47,395 bases of DNA from Salpingoeca rosetta (taxonomy: Eukaryota; Protista; Choanoflagellata): the NCBI GenBank assembly GCA_033442325.1, contig JAWQFM010000020.1, forward strand, positions 1,040,564-1,087,958, given 5' to 3'. The notes beneath the pieces are model-generated. The model made no database searches. It was not told where the DNA came from and worked only from the letters and a program-made list of their open reading frames with translations. Of this stretch, positions 10,852 through 38,933 are shown piece after piece; positions within the stretch are counted from its first letter, which is position 1, and each line of letters begins with the position of its first letter. Both the position numbers and the translations under genes were made by a program.

Positions 10852-10970
10852 TCACGCCACACAACCCAGCGCCTCCGTGATGATGGCTGGGGCACTGATG
10901 GTGCTGGCAAGCATGCACACGTTGAACTGAATCGGCGATACGATGCTGGGGAACACCATCGCATCTAGGG

Positions 10971-11051
<81 letters not shown>

Positions 11052-11318
11052 TGGGACAGTTGTCATTGTGAGCAGATGTGAACAGGCATTGCAAATGGTG
11101 CACATTAGAGTTACACACGCGCGCAAGCAAACGCGTTCCCTCCACCGTGCTTTCCTCATGCTCATCTCACCTCGCAGCACGTATGCAACTTGCTGCTCCC
11201 ACAGATCAGGTGCAGTGAACAGGTACGCGCGGAAGTTGAACCTGTTGGCAAGAAGTGCAAGCAAACATCGTAGGGTTGAGGACAAGAGTGGCCACGCGCA
11301 TGAACGCAGCAACCTTCC

Positions 11319-11370
<52 letters not shown>

Positions 11371-11620
11371 ACTACGGCGCGCAAGGGAGGACAAAGCAGT
11401 CGTAGTTGGCATTCGCCTCACGTGTATCGACGGCTGATGTCCGCCTTGACGGATTCGAGCAACTCAGCACGCGTGGGAGGCAGTACACCTGATGATGGCG
11501 GTGGCAATTGTGATAATGATGTACATGTGAGGTGATGGGTGCACGGGGTGTGAGGTGAGCATGTGACGTGAGCAGCATCCGCACTTCCACGCGCGGAGAA
11601 ATGACGAAGTACATGTGCGA

Positions 11621-11697
<77 letters not shown>

Positions 11698-11854
11698 CAC
11701 GCTGAGTGGCCACTCACGCTTTTGGTCTGGCCACTGCTGAACCCTGAAGCGAACCGTCAATTCCATCACGGACCCTGAGTAAGAAGCAGCATACGCCTGA
11801 GCACACGAAGACATACGCGTGCATTTGTCCGTGCGTATTTGTGCATTGAACAAT

Positions 11855-11892
<38 letters not shown>

Positions 11893-12569
11893 GATGTGTT
11901 GGGAATGCACGGCTGCGCTCACCTTCATGTTGCTGTTCTGCGCTGACGTCCCTTGCGTGGACAGCCTGATGACAACCACGAAACAGCAACACAACAATGA
12001 GCTTGACATTACATTGCCTCGCATAAATACACACACACTCTCTCATACCATAATACACTCACACGATCACACACCCCTCCACACTGCAGTGCACCTTGAC
12101 GGCGTGCATGGCGGAATCTGTGTCCAGAACGACTACGGTCCCCCCGATGGCCGGCACAGACACGCACTGATGATGATGATGGTGGTGGTGGTGACAGGTG
12201 GTGGTGGTGAGTGAGTGATAGCAGTGCAGTGAACATACATCACTGCACACGTAATATGCAAACAGGACGTACAAGCAGTATAAGCAGCTGTACCAACAAA
12301 GCAGCAGCAGCACCACCAGCACCACCAGCAGCAGGAGGTGAAGTTCCCACCTGCTCACGTGGTCCGAGATTGCAGACCACAAACTCGTGCGTGTGTTTCG
12401 TGTCAACAGCAGTGGTGCTGAGGGGAAGAAACACTTTGGCAGAAATCGTTGGCTGGCGCACAAGCGTGTGCAGTCCCAGATGGTGGCTTGCCACCACAAT
12501 GTGCTGCACAAATGAAACAGAACCAGAGAGCGTCAACGAGAAGCCACACATCGGCTCTGTGTGTGTGTG

Positions 12570-12654
<85 letters not shown>

Positions 12655-14040
12655 ACGTATCTGTGCATGTGTGCGTGTTGAGAGCGAACACCTACAGCAA
12701 GAAAAAAAAAAGAAGCAGTCATGGTGTGCACGATCACCGGCAACTGTTCTCACCTCTGGTGCATCGCCATCACGCGTGCGCATGTGCGGTGTCGTCGTGT
12801 GGAATGGAACCTGGTGACGATTGGTGGGGGAGAGATGTGTGATGGATGGCCGCGTGTGAGTGTTTGCGTTCAAGGGGTTGATGAAGGACAGTGGTACGGC
12901 TGTCGTGCACACACTCAATGCTGCAAACGCTCTTCGCGCGATCCCACCTCTGTGTTGTCACCGAGGATACGAAGAGCAATGTTTTCGGGAACGATGGCTG
13001 GGCCCTGTGCCACTGAAGCTGCAAGCTTCTGCAAGTACTGCACACACGCGTGCTGCGGTGTGTTTGCATTGCCAAACTGTTTCAGCACTCTCGGTCCCTG
13101 GGTCCTGTTACGCAGCTGTTAGCAAGAGCACATGAGTGAACGCGGTCGGGATGCACATGTGGGAGCCACAATGGGCGCACAATGTCTGACGTTTCAAACA
13201 TGAGCAATGGCGCACGAGCATGACATGTATGACGTGCGCACAAGCACAAATATGCACACACATGCACGCACACATGCACACACACACGCACACACGCATG
13301 CACGCACACATGCACACACACGCACACAGAGCAGAAACGCAACGCACCACGTCGACTGGAGCGGTGTGGTGGGAGAGCCCGCCGGTCCAGAGATAGTGGT
13401 CGAGAGCCATTGCGGGCCAGCCACGGAGATTTCCCTCAACGCCCCTGTTGCTGAAGTCGAGAAAGCTTCCTTGCACTGCCTGGCTTCTCAAGCTGCGGTC
13501 AGCATCCACCATGTCTCGGCACTCTGACAACAGCGAGCTGTCAATGTCAGTAACGTCCTGTTCGACGGCAGTGGCACCGGTGAGCTTGCTCCTGAAGTAA
13601 TGCCGATGATCCCAGCGTTGGGTCGACGAGGTGTACCTCTTGCTGCTCTCACTTCCACACCCGTCGTCCGTTTCACAGCTGCGATCAGCCTCCTTTCCCT
13701 CACCAGCACCATTACCACCACCAGCACCATTACCACCACCAGCAGCATCAACTTTACCACCAGCATCACCATCGCCACCACCCTCAGCACCAGTGTCAGC
13801 TTCGTGCAGTGGAGCGGTCCAGATGTGGATGCTGTGGTTGGCGCCCCTGAGCGGCAGGCCTGCGAGCCGGCGGTTGCGCCCGGCAACGTGCAGGCGCATG
13901 GCCACGGCATCTGTGAGCGCCACCAGGCGATGTGCCACGGTGCCGGCGTCCTTGACATCTGCAGGCTCGTAGAACGTGCTCACCCACAGCACACCAAACA
14001 GCACCAGCGCCAACAGTGGCTTGTCCACCACACTCATCAT
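10852..14040 (-). CDS. Hypothetical protein with N-terminal signal anchor (type II membrane or secreted), function unknown
   Basis: Long first exon MMSVVDKPLLALVLFGVLWVSTFYEP... with a Gly-rich stem, ending at a GTGCGT donor near 13347. Further exons near 13095-12945, 12810-12755, 12556-12351, 12165-12090, 11950-11922, 11797-11718, 11315-11170 and 10965-10852 (…TEALGCVA*). Some exon junctions are uncertain. Confidence 0.55.
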
Positions 14041-14436
14041 CTTCGGTGCGCCTGAATTCAGTCTTGCGCAAAAGTGAAGCCTGAATTCAGTTCTCTCAAC
14101 TGCATTCAGTTTGTTTGCTGGGTTGCCAAGAAGAAGAAGCTGACCAAGCGAAGCAGGCGAACAGAGGAAAGACAGCAAGCAAGCACAGCACAGGGACGAT
14201 GTGGCACACGAGAGCAGCGAGGCCGCCATGGGTGGAGACACCCCGTGATCGCGCACAGGACACAGCAAAGCTGCAAGTCTCCGGCAGACCTTCCACAATG
14301 GAGCGCAGAGCACAGTCTCCCAGGTGTGTGTGTGTGTTTGTGTGTGTGTTTGTGTGTATGTGTGTGTGCTTGTACTGCTCTCGCTTTGCGGTGGTTCATC
14401 TACGCTGAGAGTTGTCGTGCCACAACAAGAACGAGA
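14041..14436. promoter_or_regulatory. Bidirectional promoter with two CTGAATTCAG palindromes and an RFX-type GTTGCCA site at 14122-14128
   Basis: Divergent ATGs about 400 bp apart; motifs read directly at 14052-14061, 14081-14090 and 14122-14135. Confidence 0.55.
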
Positions 14437-15213
14437 ATGAGGAACGAGGACGATCCTGCTTGCCAACAAGCAACACATTCCGGTACAGCACACACACACA
14501 CACGCACACACACACGCACACACGCACATACACTCACATACTCTCTCTCATGCAGGAAGCAAGACTATCGGCGAAAGGTGTCGCAGCCTGACTCGGCAGA
14601 AGGCAGGAATCCATATGGAGAAGAGGCTGTGCAACAGGAGATTGCGAATCTGGAGGCGCAAGCACAGCTGCTGGAGCGCGCTGGGGAGGCGGCGGAGAAG
14701 AAGCGAGACTTTGCATCGGCAGAGAAACACTTCCTCGAAGCCGCACGGCTCATGGGCGAGGCGCAGGGGCTTAAGCGGCGATCGTTCAACCCGTCCGCAG
14801 AGGAAACCACATCGTACAAGAAGCGAGGAGGCCGCGGAGGAAGAGGCGGAGCACACCATGCGCACACACAGGGCGCAAGAGGAAGGGGGTGGAACAGCCA
14901 CGATGGCGCTGACGACAATGAGCGAGATGACGAGGTCATCCGCGGCCGCCGTGGCCGTGGTGGCACTGGCGGTGGTGGACATCACCAGCAGCAGCGGCAT
15001 CGCGATGACCAAGATGACGAGGACGACGAATACGCAGAGGAAGACGACGACGTCGACCAACTGGGTATGAATTGTTGTGCGTATGAGAGAGATAGAGGGT
15101 GTGTGTCTGTGTCTGTGTCTGTGTGTCTGTGTGTGCTTGCATGTCTGTGTGTGTGTGTGCTTGCATGTCTGTGTGTGTGTGCTTGCATGTCTGTGTGTGT
15201 GTGCTTGCATGTG

Positions 15214-15245
<32 letters not shown>

Positions 15246-15521
15246 CGCCCGTCCGTCCGTCCACCAGTTTGTCCACCAGTTTGTCCGTCCGTCCGTCGGT
15301 TTGTTTGTTCGGTTCCTCTCTCGTGGTCGAAACATATGTGCAATCAAGAAGCAGCACGCTGACCTTCCCCCTCCCCTGCACCTGCTCATGGATTGTTGCA
15401 GACTACAAGTTGAATCGCACCCTTGGCAAGACACTCATGTCACATCGCGATATGCACACACGCCGCGAAATCGTGTCGGCTGACCAACAGCTGCTGGTGC
15501 GTGTGTCTGTATGCGTGTGTG

Positions 15522-15563
<42 letters not shown>

Positions 15564-15913
15564 CGTGTGTGTGTGTGTTGTTATTTGCGTGTTTGCAAGT
15601 GTGTGCTGCGACCTTTTACTCCTCTCTTTCAAATCCACCATCCCAATCCATCCTCACGCTTGCTCACATTGCATCACACCTGCATCACCGGCCACCACAG
15701 GATGTGCTTGGCTGGTCGGAGGCGAAGCGAGAACGCATGCTTAGCGCGTTCCGGGCCATCACATCATCTCCCCACATGACCTTCCACCACTTTGCCGCAT
15801 TTCTCTCCACGCAAGGCGTGTCCCTCAAGTTTGCTGTTCCGCTCTTCCGCGCGTTTGATCGCAGGCAGCACGGTGGGTTGTTGCGGCTACTTGTGTGTGT
15901 GTCTTTGTGTGTG

Positions 15914-15958
<45 letters not shown>

Positions 15959-16016
15959 CTGCCTCTGTGTGTGTGTGTGTGTGCCTGCCTCTGTGTGTGT
16001 GTGTGTGTGTGCCTGC

Positions 16017-16050
<34 letters not shown>

Positions 16051-16576
16051 CTGTCTATCTGCCTGTCTGTTTGTCTGTCAGTCTGTCTGCCTGCGTGTAT
16101 CCCTGGATGACATTGACCCTTCGTACGCGCGCCACCCTTCCCCTTGACGACGCCCCCCCCCTCCAATGATATCAGGCACGTGGCTGTCGGATGGAGACTT
16201 TCTTATTGGCATTGGTGCGTGCGCGCGCAACACGCCCCACTCTGGCGGGTGGCTGCGCGTGCGGCTTGGCTTTATCTTCCGCTACTTCTCCAGCAACGGC
16301 AAGACCATGACCGCCGACCAGCTGCAGACATTCGTGGACGAGTGCTGTGCTGCTGATCCACGCATCACGCTGCGCCTCCCTAACCCGCCGGGCGCAACCC
16401 AGCGCGTGCACATGAGCCGGTCGATGGCTGCCAAGCAGACGGTGACGCCTGCGCGGCTGGTGGAGCACCTGATGGGCGGACGACACGCGATGTCGCAGTC
16501 GGAGTTTGTGTCGCTCGGTCTCAACCGCTCGCTTCCAGACTGCACCAACGTCTGCCGTTTCAACCTTGGCGCATAG
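14437..16576 (+). CDS. Protein with a MIT/TPR-like helical hairpin, a low-complexity RGG/acidic linker and a degenerate EF-hand (calcineurin-B-like) C-terminal domain
   Basis: Exons about 14437-14482, 14556-15064, 15402-15496, 15701-15871 and 16175-16576. Motifs: [31 protein letters not shown]; [26 protein letters not shown]...[29 protein letters not shown]. The start codon is uncertain. Confidence 0.65.
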
Positions 16577-22956: not shown

Positions 22957-23870
22957 TCAGTCGAGGTCCTCCACGTCTGTGGATGCGACGACTTGGATGA
23001 GAGGCCGTGTGCCGCCGTCACTGCCACCTACTGTGGTAACGCTTGGTTTGTTGGTGCTGTTGCTGTTGGCGCCAATGCCCTCCCATCGTGGCCCACGGCC
23101 CGTCTCAATCTCCTCGGGCACATCGCTGTCCTCGTTGTCTGTCTCATCATCAAGCTCATCATCATCATCATCATCGTCATCACCAATGCGAGCACGTCCA
23201 ACGAGCGTGGTGATCTCTTGTTGCGGCTGTTGCTGCTGCTCCTGCTCTTCGCCGGCACTGCTGCTGTCATCGCTGGCCACCTCCTCAATCAGCATGCGGC
23301 GTGGCTCCTGCTGCGGCTGCGTGATAAACGCGCTCTGCCCCGCGAGCGACGTTGGTGCCGCTTCCTCCTGATCATCAAACTCGTCCACTTCGTCTTCATC
23401 CCACAGCTGCCGCGGTGCGCGTGGCCCCGTGATGTCAATCACGTCTGCACGCACCGCTCCCGAACTCGCCGCTGTCTGCGCCACCTGCTCCTTGGTGGCA
23501 CCAGAGTGTCCGTATTGCTCCCTGTTGTACTGCATCCGCGCGTCCGCCTGCATATCGTCCTGTGGAATCTCCTCCAACTGTGGAGGTGCGCCATCACCAT
23601 CACCATCGTCGTGCTGCGCGTGTCGATACAGGTTATCAAACACGGGGTCACGGCCGAGTGTGGAGCCAACGGTAGCGGCCTCGTGCAGTGCGGGGCTGCC
23701 GTCCACCTCATCTGCATCCTCGTTGTCGGATGTGTCACTCGTCTCCCCGCGTGCTGCGCGTTCCTCCTGCGCCTTTTTCTGAAGATCCCACAGGTACTTG
23801 ACGGCCCGGAACTGGCGCGCTCGCTCCTCCTCGTTCCACCTGCAATCGGGAAGTGGGTGTGGGGGTGCAG

Positions 23871-23964
<94 letters not shown>

Positions 23965-24523
23965 GTGCAGTTGTGGATGTGCGTGTGTGAGTTTGAATTC
24001 AGTACACCACAAGCACGACCATCACCACCACAGGCACGACCATCACCACCACCACCACCACCACCACCAAAGGCACCATCACCACCATCACCATCACCAC
24101 CATCGCCACGGTGTGTACCGTTCTCTCTCCTCGCGCTCGGCCTGGCGACCGCCAACCGCCCACGCCTCTGTGCACGCGCGCTCCTTGTCCCGCACAGGCT
24201 GTGCACACAAAAAACAGAACACAATACAGTGGTGTGGTGTGGTGTGTATGGTGGGGAAACGTGGAAAGAACGCAGTGAGTGGTGGCAGCAAGCAATAATG
24301 CACAAGAGTTCATCGACACAAACACACACACACACGACCAGTACGTGTTGGCACTGACCCTGTCGTCGAGGTAGGTGAGCTGCTTGCACTTGAGGATCAT
24401 CGTCTTGCGGTAGTTCTCGATGGAGCGAATGACAGGGTTGCCCATCAAATTCAGCACACGCAGGTTCTGCCCGTCGTGGTGGTGGTGGTGGTGGTGAATG
24501 TGACCATTAATGAAGTAAGCAAT

Positions 24524-24563
<40 letters not shown>

Positions 24564-25962
24564 GCACGCACGCACGCACACACACGCACACACGCACACA
24601 CACACACACACACACAGCACACACGCACACAGCACACACGCACGCACAATTGCAGACGCACACACATGCACACACAATATTCGCACACACACGCGCGCAC
24701 ATACCGGCATCTGCGCGAACACGTCGACGACATCAGGGTCGGTGATCTTGTTGTGCGAGACGTCAACTACGCTCAGTGATGGGCACTCGATGAGGCCCTT
24801 GAGATCATCTGCCGTCTTGAGGTGGTTGTGCGTGAGCTGGATGGTGCCCAGGTTGTGCAGGTTGGACAGGCCCGTGACGCGTAGGATGGTGTTGTTGCTC
24901 AGGTTGAGCTGGTTGAGGTTGGTGAGCGCATCAAGGTTCTTGATTTCGCGGATCATGTTCTTCTGCAGATATAGACACCGCAGCTCCGTCAACGCGTCTG
25001 TGATGGTGCGGGACAGGCAGGTGTTGTGTGTTGCAGTGAGATGGGGTGCGTTGCAGTGAGATGGGGTGTGTTGCGGTGAGAAGGGGTGCGGTGGGAAGGG
25101 GTGCGATCACTCAGGATGATTTGTGGATGTCACATGCAGCACAAGAGAGACAGGAAACAAACGTTGCCCGTGTGCCCGCACCGAGGTTCTCAATCTCAGA
25201 GATGCCGTTTCCTTCCAGCCAGAGGCAGCGCAGGCCCGTGTACTCCTCCAAGTTCTCGATCTTGGTGAAGCCTGGTGAGTGTGAGGGTGCATGAATGTGT
25301 CGGGGAAGAGTGAGTGTGCACGAGTGCGTGAGTGTGTGCCTGTGTCTGTGTCTGTGTGTGGGGGGGGGGCTTATGTCTGTGCCTGTGTCTGTGCATGTGT
25401 CTGTGCCTGTGTCTGTGCCTGTCTGTGTCTGTGTGACGGCAAAGGTGATGGGGGTGACACTGCTCATTGCACGCAGGTCTGGCTTGCACGAGCTATCCAG
25501 CAACGCGTATCACCTTTGTAGTGCAGATAAAGAATGTCGTTGAGGCTTGGTGTTGTGTACTGCTTCATTTCCTTGCACAGCTGCTTCAGGTACTTCTTCG
25601 TGATCCTGCCATGTATGCACGTTGTCAATGAAGGTGAGCACTGGGAACGAGTGAAACAGGAAAACGAGACAGACACATGAAACGGATACAGATAAACATA
25701 AGCACACATCCACGTACATACATGGATCTTCACACACATTCGCGCACACACACACATGCGTACCCACAAGCACACACACACACACAAGCACACACGCACA
25801 CAAGCACACACGCACACAAGCACACACGCACACATGCACAAGCACACGCAACTGAGCACACGAGCACACATTTGCACACCTGGGCATGTTGGGGTTCTGT
25901 TCTTCCTCGCGCTGCTTAAGGCCCGAGGCTGGCACGACAGCTGTCTGCTCTGTTGGCTGCAT
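22957..25962 (-). CDS. DNAAF1: Dynein axonemal assembly factor 1 (LRRC50/ODA7)
   Basis: Spliced product [56 protein letters not shown]..., SDS22-type LRRs, LRRcap [45 protein letters not shown], then a coiled coil and acidic tail ending DVEDLD*. Confidence 0.95.
25027..25105 (+). repeat. 20-bp minisatellite TGYGTTGCAGTGAGATGGGG x3-4 in a DNAAF1 intron
   Basis: Read directly; copies degenerate towards the right. Confidence 0.85.
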
Positions 25963-26331
25963 GGTGGCGGCGGTGGTGGTGTTGATGGCTGCTTGCTTCT
26001 TTCTTGCTCGGTGCTGGTGCTTGCTTGTTGGGTGCTTGGTTTGGTTTGGTTGCTGGGATGATGGACGTGCGAGGTGTAAGTGCAACGACTGCTTCTTGCT
26101 TTGCTTGTTGGGCGGACGTTTGGGTCGAATATTCGCTTTATTTTCATTCAATTATCCATACTGCCTGCGTTGCCAAGAAGAACCAAGCAAAGAAGGAAAG
26201 CACAAACACACACGCCATCCCATCACAACAGGCAACACAACAACAACACAACACAGCTCGCCCTGCTTGCTCTGACCGCCACAACAGCTAGCCAACACAC
26301 AGACACAGGAGACAAAGCAACCAAACAAGCC
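25963..26331. promoter_or_regulatory. Bidirectional promoter shared by DNAAF1 and RIB43A, with an RFX (X-box) half-site GTTGCCA at 26169-26175
   Basis: Divergent ATGs 369 bp apart. GTTGCCAAGAAGAAC at 26169-26183 and a second half-site AGGCAAC at 26230-26236. GTTGYCA is the RFX motif reported for choanoflagellate ciliary genes. Confidence 0.7.
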
Positions 26332-27449
26332 ATGTTCAAGCTCGACATCCCCCCTGATCCTCGCGAGGTTTGTACGGTGGACGGGTGACAGAGCATAGAA
26401 GCTGCAGCATCGAAGCAGCATTGAAGCAGCCGCATTGACACTCCCATGAGCGCCATACACTCGCCATACATGTATTTGAGTGCTTCAAACACCCTCATTG
26501 TTCTCTCACGCATGGATGAACCTTGTGTCACACAACATCATTGCCACCACAGGCCGCCAAGCTGGAGGCAAAGCGCCGTCGTGCAGAGGAACGAAAGGTG
26601 GGTTGGCTGTGAACGTGATGCTGGTGGACTTTGTACATTGTTGTTGTTGTTGTTGTTGGTGCGCGACTGTTCTGCATCGGCTGTTTGTTCGAAACAGACT
26701 GAGCAAGTTGTACACAACCAACAAAGGTGCATGCACCTACGAACGTGGAAAGCACGTGCTCACTCGCCCCATCTGTTTTATTGTGACTGCTATTACAGAA
26801 CCGCATCTTCAATGCGCGCCAGCGCACCATGGGCCTCGATGTCGAGGCGCTGGAGCAGCAAATCGCAGAGAAGAAGCAGCGCGAGGAAGAGGAAAAGGAA
26901 CGCGAGCGCGCAATGGGTGAGGACACTCACAAACACACAAACACACACACACAGTGAAGGGGGCAGAAGTGCCCCGAATAATGTGTGAAGAATACCACAC
27001 CGCGCTCACATTGCACTGTTGGTTGTTGCACTTGCAGATGCGGAGATGCTTGAGAACGCCAAGCTTGGTTTGATGATGGAGAAGAAGCACCAAGAGCACC
27101 TCCGAACCCGTCGTCTGGTGCGTGTGTCTCTCTGTCTGTGTGTCTGTGTCTGTGTGTGTGTGTGTGTGACTGTCTGCGTGCGTGTGCCTGTCTCTCTGTC
27201 TGTTTGTCTGTTTGTCTGTTTGTCTGCTTGTGTTCACTTCACTTGTGTTCACTCCATCTCACCCTTCACACACCCCACAACCCTTCATCATCTTTCAGGA
27301 GGATGAGGAGTTCCACCGTACACAGCAGGCGCCGGAGACGCGCCGTGAGTTTGACCTCAACGACCCGTCCACCCTGCGCCAAAGCCGCCCGCCCACACAC
27401 GACCCAGACGTCACCCTTGGCATCTCCTCCCTCCAAGTCTTTGACGGCG

Positions 27450-30977: not shown

Positions 30978-31671
30978 TCACCACAGTGCGTCGTCATCAT
31001 CGCTGCTGTGCTGTTGCTGGTCGTGTTTGTCGTCGCCGTTGCCAAAGTCAAGCCCGCCACCGTCGGAAGACTGGGAAAAGTGGAACGACTCTGAAATGTG
31101 TTGGATATCATGCGAGGATGAGCGTTCCGCACACACACAAGGACGAAAAGACGCAACGCAACGCACACGCACACGCACACGCACACGCACACGCACACGC
31201 ACACGCACACGCACACGCACACGCACACGCACACACACGCACACGCAAATACACACGCACACATATACCTGATGGAACGTTGCTGCTAATGGGTGACTCC
31301 CGGCCTTTGTCACCGCTACCGCCACCTGACTTGACGTCTCCCTCCTCCTCCTCCGAAACATCACCGCCGCCACCGCTAATCTCAAAGTCGTCCTCAAACT
31401 CAAAGTCGTCTTCATAAGCGTCCTCCTCGTCCTCCTCCTCCACATGCTCTCCTTCATCGCCACCCACGGCTTTAGCGCCCTGCAAGGAGCCATGCCCTGC
31501 CACTTGCAGCCCTTGCTGCTGCTGTTGGCTGTTCATCTGCTGCTGGTCTGAGCTCGCGCCAGCCTGCTCTCGGGCCTGCGCCACGCGCGCCATGTACATG
31601 CGCATCACATCGTCCATCGCATCTGCACAGAATGGAGTGAACAAGAACGCGGAAAGCGGTTAGTGTGGTGT

Positions 31672-38242: not shown

Positions 38243-38933
38243 GGTGTTGTGTTGTTGCCTTCTTTGCTTGCTTGCTTGCTTGCTCGATAACGGTCGGGAC
38301 TGAATTCAGTTACCACGTGTTTGTGCGCTTACTTGTTGTTGTTTAAGTTGTTGTTGTTGTTGTTGTTGGTTGTTGTTGTTGGTTGTTGTTGGTGGTGGTG
38401 TCTGTCTGCCCATCTGTCCGATCACATGTCACACCCACGTAATCACACACACACACACAAACATACACGCATACTCTCTCTGTCTCTCTCGCTTAGTTTC
38501 CGCGACACATTGCCTCGACGAACGAATTGCTTTAGCTCTGCACAGACATGTACACACACACGCGCGCGCACACACACACACGTACATCCACAGACATGTC
38601 GCGCGCACACACACACTCTTGCAAACAAGACAAAAAGAGGAAGTGCACACATGTTGTATGAAGAGAACACGGGGATAGATACAAGTGAAGCTGACGAAAG
38701 CAGGAGAAGCAGAACAGAAAGCAGTCCATTTGTACGACAAACAAAATAAACAATAAACCCCCCCCCCACACACACACACACAGCAAACGACGTCCAACCA
38801 CTCCCATGCATCTGATCTTCTGTCCACACTGTTGCTTCAAAATAACCCCATTCGCTGGCTTGTTGACCGGCTCACTGGCCTGTTGCGATACCACCACCAC
38901 CACCACTACCATCATCATCATCATCACCACCAC

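What the first reader, a model, noticed from the sequence alone, without database searches (positions are those of the whole stretch)
14122..14157. The same extended RFX-type element sits in two bidirectional promoters and nominates new ciliary genes
Seen: GTTGCCAAGAAGAA (14 bp) is identical at 14122-14135 and 26169-26182. Similarity continues (ACCAAGCGAAGCAGG vs ACCAAGCAAAGAAGG), and each copy has CATTCA about 18-24 bp upstream. The second copy lies between two established flagellar genes. Known: RFX drives ciliary genes in animals and choanoflagellates through a GTTGYCA-type motif near the TSS. Inference: the MIT/EF-hand-like gene and/or its divergent partner are unrecognised members of the RFX ciliary regulon, and the functional element may be longer than the 7-bp core.
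Basis: partly seen in the sequence, partly recalled or inferred. Interest (0 to 1): 0.75.

Follow-up and report, generated by a model that had tools for sequence, protein, structure and literature searches.

The report
Published RFX sites at two start sites
The repeated 14-letter word is real, but it is the already published binding motif of the cilia regulator cRFXa plus five letters of ordinary leader sequence. The "new" target gene next to it is already listed, as a gene of unknown function, among the genes that drop when cRFXa is knocked out.

Summary
GTTGCCAAGAAGAA is identical at 14122 and 26169, each in a compact two-way promoter of Salpingoeca rosetta.

- **The element is known.** Both sites are listed in Coyle et al. 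2023 (PMC10530576, File S7) as high-scoring RFX monomer motifs. Each sits in sense orientation at an annotated start site: EGD76430 at +1, and RIBC2/EGD76426 at +3.
- **One gene responds to RFX loss.** In that paper's cRFXa-knockout RNA-seq, EGD76430 (PTSG_07547, here exons 14199-16576) falls 4.7-fold (FDR 4e-38) and is filed as 'unknown'. DNAAF1 and RIBC2 also fall.
- **Its partner shows no response.** EGD76431 is absent from the held table, which runs down to FDR 0.069.
- **No longer element is supported.** The published motif already runs to GTTGCCAAG. The next five letters match at p about 0.013 for this pair. Genome-wide, the base after the 9-mer is unbiased, and all leaders here are T-poor and AAG-rich.
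- **CATTCA is chance** (P about 0.4).
- **New here:** EGD76430 has relatives only in choanoflagellates so far, and a degenerate NCS-like EF-hand domain.
- **Also new here:** a separate palindrome, ACTGAATTCAGT, is strongly over-represented near gene starts.
- The scan has noted RFX-like sites elsewhere in this genome (s1-443454).

The parts
14119..14130 (+). RFX monomer site 1: published HOMER 12-mer TGGGTTGCCAAG (core GTTGCCAAG at 14122-14130). It lies at +1 of the annotated EGD76430 start site and at -57, antisense, for EGD76431.
   Evidence: Searches give the sequence. Searches give File S7 of PMC10530576 (score 12.24). tie the window gene to EGD76430.
14131..14157 (+). Start of the EGD76430 leader (AAGAAGAAGCTGACCAAGCGAAGCAGG). 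It holds the 5-nt extension of the 14-mer and the 13/15 similarity to site 2.
   Evidence: 5-nt run p about 0.013, gapped alignment p about 0.044; the leader is 5% T with 9 AAG against 1.2 expected.
26166..26177 (+). RFX monomer site 2: published 12-mer TGCGTTGCCAAG (core at 26169-26177). It lies at +3 of the RIBC2/EGD76426 start site and at -43, antisense, for DNAAF1/EGD76427.
   Evidence: score 13.29; both genes are in the conserved ciliome and both fall in the cRFXa mutant.
26178..26196 (+). Start of the RIBC2 leader (AAGAACCAAGCAAAGAAGG), the counterpart of the extension at site 1.
   Evidence: leader 7% T, AAG 3-fold over uniform expectation.
14199..16576 (+). EGD76430 / PTSG_07547 coding region, 433 aa. 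Exons: 14199-14323, 14556-15064, 15402-15496, 15701-15872 and 16176-16576 (stop included). The protein has a helical hairpin, a disordered acidic and RGG-rich linker, and a C-terminal degenerate NCS-like EF-hand domain.
   Evidence: One search gives the sequence and splice sites. P0001 is 100% identical to exon 5 and carries the accessions EGD76430.1 and XP_004991345.1. Searches give the fold. One search gives the CDS span.
10852..14040 (-). EGD76431, the divergent partner: 497 aa, hydrophobic N-terminal segment, no Pfam family. No RFX dependence is seen in the held data.
   Evidence: called gene, no Pfam; first exon; absent from File S5 down to FDR 0.069.
22957..25962 (-). DNAAF1 orthologue (EGD76427), 542 aa. 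Falls in the cRFXa mutant (log2FC -1.93).
26332..26367 (+). First coding exon of RIB43A/RIBC2 (EGD76426, 355 aa). log2FC -1.69; found in the cilia mass-spectrometry set.
14051..14110 (.). This is probably promoter sequence of EGD76431.
   Evidence: 446 strand hits genome-wide against 1 for the control; the variant is not enriched, 17 against 11.

Best explanation
Both copies are single (monomer-type) binding sites for the choanoflagellate ciliogenesis factor cRFXa, of the published form NNNGTTGCCAAG.

- **Position.** Each site lies in sense orientation right at the annotated start site of one gene of a very compact two-way promoter, where the two start sites are about 30-55 nt apart.
- **Action (inferred).** cRFXa bound there raises transcription of the sense gene: EGD76430 at site 1 and RIBC2 at site 2. 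At site 2 it also raises the antisense neighbour DNAAF1.
- **The 14-bp identity.** It is the 9-bp motif plus the first five transcribed bases of two leaders. Like other leaders in this window, these are T-poor and full of AAG. It is not a longer recognition element.
- **The genes at site 1.** EGD76430 is a true RFX-dependent gene, shown by published RNA-seq, so it is not a new nomination. Its partner EGD76431 is probably driven by the ACTGAATTCAGT palindromes that sit between the two start sites (inferred).

Shown: the motif identity, its position, and the RNA-seq dependence.
Inferred: direct binding at these two sites, and the division of labour between the two genes at site 1.
For: - **Published motif lists.** File S7 of PMC10530576 lists TGGGTTGCCAAG for EGD76430 (+1) and EGD76431 (-57), and TGCGTTGCCAAG for EGD76426 (+3) and EGD76427 (-43).
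- **Published RNA-seq, Files S5/S6.** log2FC in the cRFXa mutant is -2.22 for EGD76430 (FDR 4e-38), -1.93 for DNAAF1 and -1.69 for RIBC2.
- **Published experiments.** The paper shows in vitro binding of cRFXa to this motif, and a reporter loss when the motif is mutated in the spag6 promoter.
- **Mapping of window to record.** The match is exact: P0001 carries the accession EGD76430.1, and the gene order and Pfam hits of the neighbours agree.
- **A third promoter copy.** The 14-mer at L005 belongs to the SPATA17-like IQ gene EGD72877: motif at +17, log2FC -1.33.
- **Orientation at start sites.** Among conserved-ciliome entries of File S7 within 10 nt of the start site, I count 9 in sense and 1 in antisense orientation (hand count).
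- **No general extension.** In the 100 listed genome sites the base after GTTGCCAAG is A 25, C 34, G 23, T 18 (my hand tally of the list). GTTGCCAAGAA makes up only 34 of 473 sites.
- **Leader composition.** Four leaders in the window, including that of the RFX-independent OFD1, have 5-8% T and AAG at 3-7 times uniform expectation.
Against: - No binding data (ChIP or similar) exist for these two sites.
- Only the spag6 motif was mutated in the paper.
- The 5-nt extension is nominally unlikely for this pair (p about 0.013).
- By my hand count, 3-4 of about 86 HOMER-scored GTTGCCAAG promoter sites carry the extension, against roughly 0.5-1.7 expected. A weak preference for an AAG-rich start therefore cannot be excluded.
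- The held copy of File S5 is cut at FDR 0.069, so the exact value for EGD76431 was not seen.
Confidence: 0.85

Rival explanations
1. The functional unit is a longer composite: GTTGCCAAG plus an AAG-rich stretch of 14 bp or more. The extra part would be read by a second factor, or act as a start-site or leader element specific to a subset of RFX targets.
For: - Three RFX-dependent start sites share the 14-mer: EGD76430, RIBC2 and the SPATA17-like EGD72877.
- EGD76430 and EGD72877 share 18 nt plus TTTGTTTGCT upstream.
- The 5-nt run has p about 0.013.
- Five of the 7 genome copies are in promoters.
Against: - Across 100 listed GTTGCCAAG sites there is no base preference at the next position.
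- The sequences after GTTGCCAAGAAG diverge at once.
- The further similarity between the two sites needs an 8-nt shift and reaches only p about 0.044.
- AAG richness is shared by the leader of OFD1, which does not depend on RFX.
- An RFX winged-helix monomer contacts one half-site of about 6 bp (GTTRCY; that it cannot reach a 14-bp word is my inference).
Confidence: 0.12
2. The motif at site 1 is incidental, and the fall of EGD76430 in the mutant is indirect, for example through FoxJ1 or the slower growth of the mutant.
For: - 2% of all promoters carry the motif, and many motif-bearing genes are not in the ciliome.
- foxJ1 itself falls strongly in the mutant.
- EGD76430 was not found in the cilia mass-spectrometry set.
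Against: - The motif is in sense orientation exactly at the start site, the same layout as the confirmed ciliome targets.
- The fold change is among the 65 strongest.
- 75% of ciliome genes that carry the motif fall in the mutant.
Confidence: 0.08
3. The two promoters are related by duplication, or share a mobile element, and the 14-mer is a relic of common descent.
For: Two of the seven genome copies lie 12 kb apart (about 0.009 by chance).
Against: - There is no alignable similarity upstream (p about 0.075), and only low-complexity similarity downstream.
- The flanking genes are unrelated.
- The seven copies all have different contexts.
- A cluster of RFX-type sites next to ciliary genes (14122, 26169, 31038) explains the proximity equally well.
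Confidence: 0.02

Closest known systems
cRFXa monomer motif of S. rosetta ciliary promoters (Coyle et al. 2023, Curr Biol; PMC10530576)
   Same: - Same sequence (NNNGTTGCCAAG) and the same position at the start site.
- Same response to cRFXa loss.
- Both instances are in the paper's own genome-wide list (File S7).
   Different: Nothing about the element itself differs. The paper does not discuss these two promoters or EGD76430 in its text, and it tested only the spag6 motif by mutation.
Animal X-box (GTNRCC N0-3 RGYAAC), bound by an RFX dimer
   Same: The first half-site, GTTGCC, is identical. The regulon is also ciliary (DNAAF1, RIBC2).
   Different: There is no second half-site. The X-box pattern has zero matches in the window. 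These are monomer-type sites, as the paper describes for choanoflagellates.
NCS-family EF-hand proteins (NCS-1, recoverin, KChIP, calaxin), compared with the product of EGD76430
   Same: - The C-terminal 190 residues are predicted with high confidence and match NCS-1, recoverin and calaxin by fold (Foldseek E about 1e-4, TM about 0.5 on the target).
- The profile aligns FRAFDRRxxGTWLSxxDFLxG with the calsenilin EF-hand.
   Different: - No Pfam EF-hand hit.
- The loop residues that bind calcium are not conserved (read from the sequence).
- There is no N-terminal myristoylation signal.
- There is an extra helical hairpin and a long disordered linker.
- Relatives were found only in choanoflagellates and in environmental data.

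Membership tests
cRFXa / RFX monomer binding site | Core GTTRCY (choanoflagellate form GTTGYCA) scoring above the published HOMER threshold | tested here: met
   Searches give the sequence. File S7 gives scores of 12.24 (site 1) and 13.29 (site 2).
cRFXa / RFX monomer binding site | Location close to the transcription start site | tested here: met
   File S7 gives +1 (EGD76430), +3 (EGD76426), -57 (EGD76431) and -43 (EGD76427).
cRFXa / RFX monomer binding site | The adjacent gene falls when cRFXa is disrupted | tested here: met
   Published RNA-seq: EGD76430 -2.22, DNAAF1 -1.93, RIBC2 -1.69. This is not met for EGD76431, which is absent down to FDR 0.069.
cRFXa / RFX monomer binding site | cRFXa occupies this very site, and expression is lost when the site is mutated | not testable with these tools
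   The paper shows in vitro binding to the motif and a mutation test for spag6 only.
Canonical palindromic X-box | Two inverted half-sites, GTNRCC N0-3 RGYAAC | tested here: not met
   The pattern search finds 0 matches in the window. GTTGCC is followed by AAGAAG.
   - The next base in the 100 listed sites is A 25, C 34, G 23, T 18 (hand tally of the list).
- The continuations after GTTGCCAAGAA are varied.
- By hand count, 3-4 of about 86 promoter sites carry AAGAA.
Conserved ciliome / ciliary protein (for EGD76430) | An orthologue of a known ciliary gene, or detection in isolated cilia | tested here: not met
   - No human BLAST hit, and FALSE in the cilia mass-spectrometry columns of File S5.
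- Only choanoflagellate and environmental relatives were found with exon 5.
EF-hand (NCS-like) domain (for EGD76430) | EF-hand pair fold | tested here: met
   - AlphaFold model with pLDDT about 90 over residues 232-420.
- Foldseek matches NCS-1, recoverin and calaxin at E 1e-4 to 1e-3.
- The profile matches the EF-hand region of RIB72C at E 5.5e-4 and calsenilin at E 0.042.
EF-hand (NCS-like) domain (for EGD76430) | Canonical 12-residue calcium-binding loop (D-x-[DNS]-x-[DNS]-G ... E), or a Pfam EF-hand match | tested here: not met
   - The loops read DRRQHGTWLSDG and [12 protein letters not shown].
- No Pfam EF-hand family passes.
MIT domain (for EGD76430) | Three-helix bundle with a Pfam MIT match | tested here: not met
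   - Only a weak TPR_2 hit (E 0.04-0.14).
- The model has two helices, 64-90 and 94-119.

The most novel reading that the evidence does not exclude
A sense-oriented RFX half-site placed exactly at the start site, followed by an AAG-rich first 10-20 transcribed bases, could be a distinct initiator-like module. It would fix the start site of a subset of cRFXa targets (EGD76430, RIBC2, SPATA17-like). In that case EGD76430 could be a new regulator of cilium assembly: a degenerate NCS-like EF-hand protein with relatives so far found only in choanoflagellates and environmental data, not seen in isolated cilia.
Probability: 0.15. Interest if true: 0.5.

Novelty: already known. Interest (0 to 1): 0.25.

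Why it matters
It shows that reading the sequence alone recovered a real regulatory element and a real target gene.

What is left to learn is modest:
- what the choanoflagellate protein EGD76430 does in cilium formation;
- why only one gene of the site-1 promoter pair responds to RFX;
- what reads the strongly over-represented palindrome ACTGAATTCAGT, which shares that promoter.

Tried and rejected
- **Promoter duplication.** Alignments of the flanks against shuffles show no homology beyond the motif.
- **Canonical X-box dimer site.** No second half-site.
- **CATTCA as a co-motif.** Sharing a 6-mer in 40-nt windows has P about 0.40. At site 1 it lies inside a degenerate copy of ACTGAATTCAGT, but that variant is not enriched genome-wide (17 against 11). 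At site 2 the flanks do not fit the palindrome.
- **Pfam and the ESM Atlas.** They gave nothing for the exons of EGD76430, for P0001 or for the first exon of EGD76431.
- **The other two promoter copies of the 14-mer.** At L001 the gene with the motif in sense orientation was not identified; its divergent neighbour is a dual-specificity phosphatase. L003 belongs to an unidentified coiled-coil gene. Neither could be tied to an EGD record.
- **Papers on the palindrome.** None found.
- **Limits of the searches.**
The flank statistics therefore rest on a sample.
  - No hand-joined spliced protein was submitted. Exons were searched by reference, and the full-length protein used is the database record P0001.

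Full report
**Where the window comes from.** The window is G000:C20:1040564-1087958 of a 55.4-Mb genome. An exon of the gene next to site 1 is 100% identical to a database protein with the accessions EGD76430.1, XP_004991345.1 and PTSG_07547 of Salpingoeca rosetta. That protein is encoded on GL832974.1 of GCA_000188695.1, with the same neighbours as in the window. So the window is S. rosetta, and the published gene numbers can be used.

**The observation.** GTTGCCAAGAAGAA is exact at 14122-14135 and 26169-26182. These are the only two matches in the window even with two mismatches allowed, against 0.19 expected.
- The genome holds seven copies, against none for the reversed control. Two read as coding sequence and five lie in promoter or leader sequence.
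- The further 13/15 similarity (14143-14157 and 26182-26196) is real but shifted by 8 nt between the two sites.
- CATTCA lies 19 and 24 nt upstream of the motif.
- Site 2 lies between DNAAF1 (- strand, ATG at 25962) and RIB43A/RIBC2 (+ strand, ATG at 26332).

**What the element is.** Coyle et al. 2023 (PMC10530576) found one motif enriched in S. rosetta ciliary promoters. They showed that cRFXa binds it in vitro, that it clusters at start sites, and that mutating it lowers spag6 reporter activity.
- Their File S7 lists every high-scoring instance. It contains TGGGTTGCCAAG for EGD76430 (+1 from the start site, sense) and EGD76431 (-57, antisense).
- It also contains TGCGTTGCCAAG for EGD76426/RIBC2 (+3, sense) and EGD76427/DNAAF1 (-43, antisense).
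- These are exactly the two sites of the finding. The published motif already extends to GTTGCCAAG, so it is longer than the 7-bp core.
- No second half-site is present, and the X-box pattern has no match in the window. These are monomer-type sites.
- Among conserved-ciliome entries of File S7 within 10 nt of a start site, I count nine in sense and one in antisense orientation (hand count). Both sites here have that layout.

**Are the genes at site 1 in the regulon?**
- The paper's RNA-seq of the cRFXa mutant gives EGD76430 a log2FC of -2.22 (FDR 4e-38). That places it among the 65 genes that fall more than four-fold, labelled 'unknown', with no InterPro domain, no human hit and no detection in the cilia mass-spectrometry set.
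- DNAAF1 (-1.93) and RIBC2 (-1.69) also fall.
- EGD76431 is absent from the held table, which runs down to FDR 0.069. It is therefore either unchanged or filtered out as too weakly expressed (average TPM of 1 or less).
It confirms one of the two genes and gives no support for the other.

**Is there a longer element?** The evidence is mostly against it.
- For this pair, the five extra identical bases have p about 0.013, and the gapped downstream similarity p about 0.044, against dinucleotide-preserving shuffles.
- Genome-wide, GTTGCCAAG is about 3-fold enriched (473 against 152). The base that follows it in the 100 listed sites is A 25, C 34, G 23, T 18 (my tally of the list).
- Only 34 of 473 sites continue with AA, and the sequences after GTTGCCAAGAAG diverge at once.
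- By my count, about 86 distinct HOMER-scored promoter sites end in AAG, and 3-4 of them carry AAGAA. One of these is the SPATA17-like EGD72877, which also falls in the mutant. That is at most a weak excess over the 0.5-1.7 expected.
- All four leaders examined in the window have 5-8% T and AAG at 3-7 times uniform expectation. One of them belongs to OFD1, which does not respond to cRFXa.
- Because the motif sits at +1 to +3, the 'extension' is simply the first transcribed bases of such a leader.
- I put a functional longer element at about 0.12.

**CATTCA.** Sharing some 6-mer in the 40 nt upstream happens in 40% of shuffles.
- At site 1, CATTCA lies inside ACTGCATTCAGT. This is a one-mismatch copy of a palindrome present twice just upstream (CCTGAATTCAGT at 14051 and 14080).
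- That variant is not enriched genome-wide (17 against 11).

**The product of EGD76430.** The five exons (14199-14323, 14556-15064, 15402-15496, 15701-15872, 16176-16576) reproduce the 433-aa record exactly.
- Pfam finds nothing.
- Relatives found with exon 5 come from Hartaetosiga gracilis, Salpingoeca infusionum, S. macrocollata and unnamed environmental data.
- An AlphaFold model built on their alignment has a confident two-helix hairpin (64-119), a disordered acidic and RGG-rich linker, and a confident C-terminal domain (232-420).
- The C-terminal domain matches NCS-1, recoverin and calaxin by fold (E about 1e-4).
- The family profile weakly matches the EF-hand part of the ciliary protein RIB72C (E 5.5e-4) and calsenilin (E 0.042).
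- The calcium-binding loop positions are not conserved (read).
- 'EF-hand-like' therefore holds by fold, and 'MIT-like' does not.
- No hand-joined spliced model was searched. Exons went in by reference, and the full-length sequence used is the database record.

**Most likely mechanism.** cRFXa binds the single half-site at the start site of each compact two-way promoter and drives the sense gene. At site 2 it also drives DNAAF1. At site 1 the antisense gene EGD76431 starts about 45-55 nt away, among the ACTGAATTCAGT copies, and is probably driven by whatever reads them. Binding at these two sites and this division of labour are inferred, not shown.

**Verdict.** Both are already in published tables, and the proposed longer element and the CATTCA co-motif are not supported. 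Interest is low. What remains of value is the description of the EGD76430 family and the palindrome noted in passing.

Noticed in passing
window 14051-14062, 14080-14091, 38299-38310 (and L008-L027): - The palindrome ACTGAATTCAGT is hugely over-represented in this genome: CTGAATTCAGT gives 225+221 strand hits against 1 for the reversed control.
- In 20 sampled sites it lies mostly in promoter-like sequence, with the first ATG on one or both sides often within about 40-140 nt.
- In the window it sits at the EGD76431 start site (two copies 29 nt apart) and 57 nt upstream of the OFD1 ATG.
- Pairs spaced exactly 29 nt apart occur three times in the genome.
- No paper was found.
- It looks like an undescribed promoter element of S. 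rosetta.
   Followed up: partly
window 14065-14072: TTGCGCAA, the classic C/EBP-type bZIP palindrome, lies exactly between the two perfect ACTGAATTCAGT copies in the EGD76430/EGD76431 intergenic region.
   Followed up: no
window 31035-31046: A third RFX-type site, GCCGTTGCCAAA, is listed in File S7 for EGD76425 at -223. That makes three HOMER-scored sites within 17 kb, against about 0.13 expected per window. This is a local cluster of RFX-motif promoters next to DNAAF1, RIBC2 and OFD1. OFD1 itself (EGD76424) is unchanged in the cRFXa mutant.
   Followed up: partly
L005 (G000:C11:1404469) compared with window 14109-14139: The SPATA17-like IQ gene EGD72877 and EGD76430 share TTTGTTTGCT, then 0 or 2 nt, then GTTGCCAAGAAGAAGAAG. 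Both genes fall in the cRFXa mutant.
   Followed up: partly
G000:C26:421620 and G000:C31:542984: Two RFX-type sites on different contigs have near-identical 35-nt continuations: GTTGCCAAGAAG[A/T]TCCGCACAGAACAAGCGC[C/T]TCT. They are probably duplicated promoters or paralogous genes.
   Followed up: no
G000:C3:1249807-1250666 and C4:444039: GTTGCCAAGGAAGTCACGTGTCGCAGTCAAGTCAC recurs four times within 900 bp on C3 and once on C4. This is a short tandem or dispersed repeat that carries an RFX-like 9-mer.
   Followed up: no
window 14199-14297: The annotated EGD76430 start (ATG at 14199) adds 33 poorly conserved residues ahead of a second in-frame ATG at 14298 (MERRAQSPR). The S. infusionum relative aligns only from the RAQSPR region onward, so the true start may be the second ATG.
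   Followed up: no
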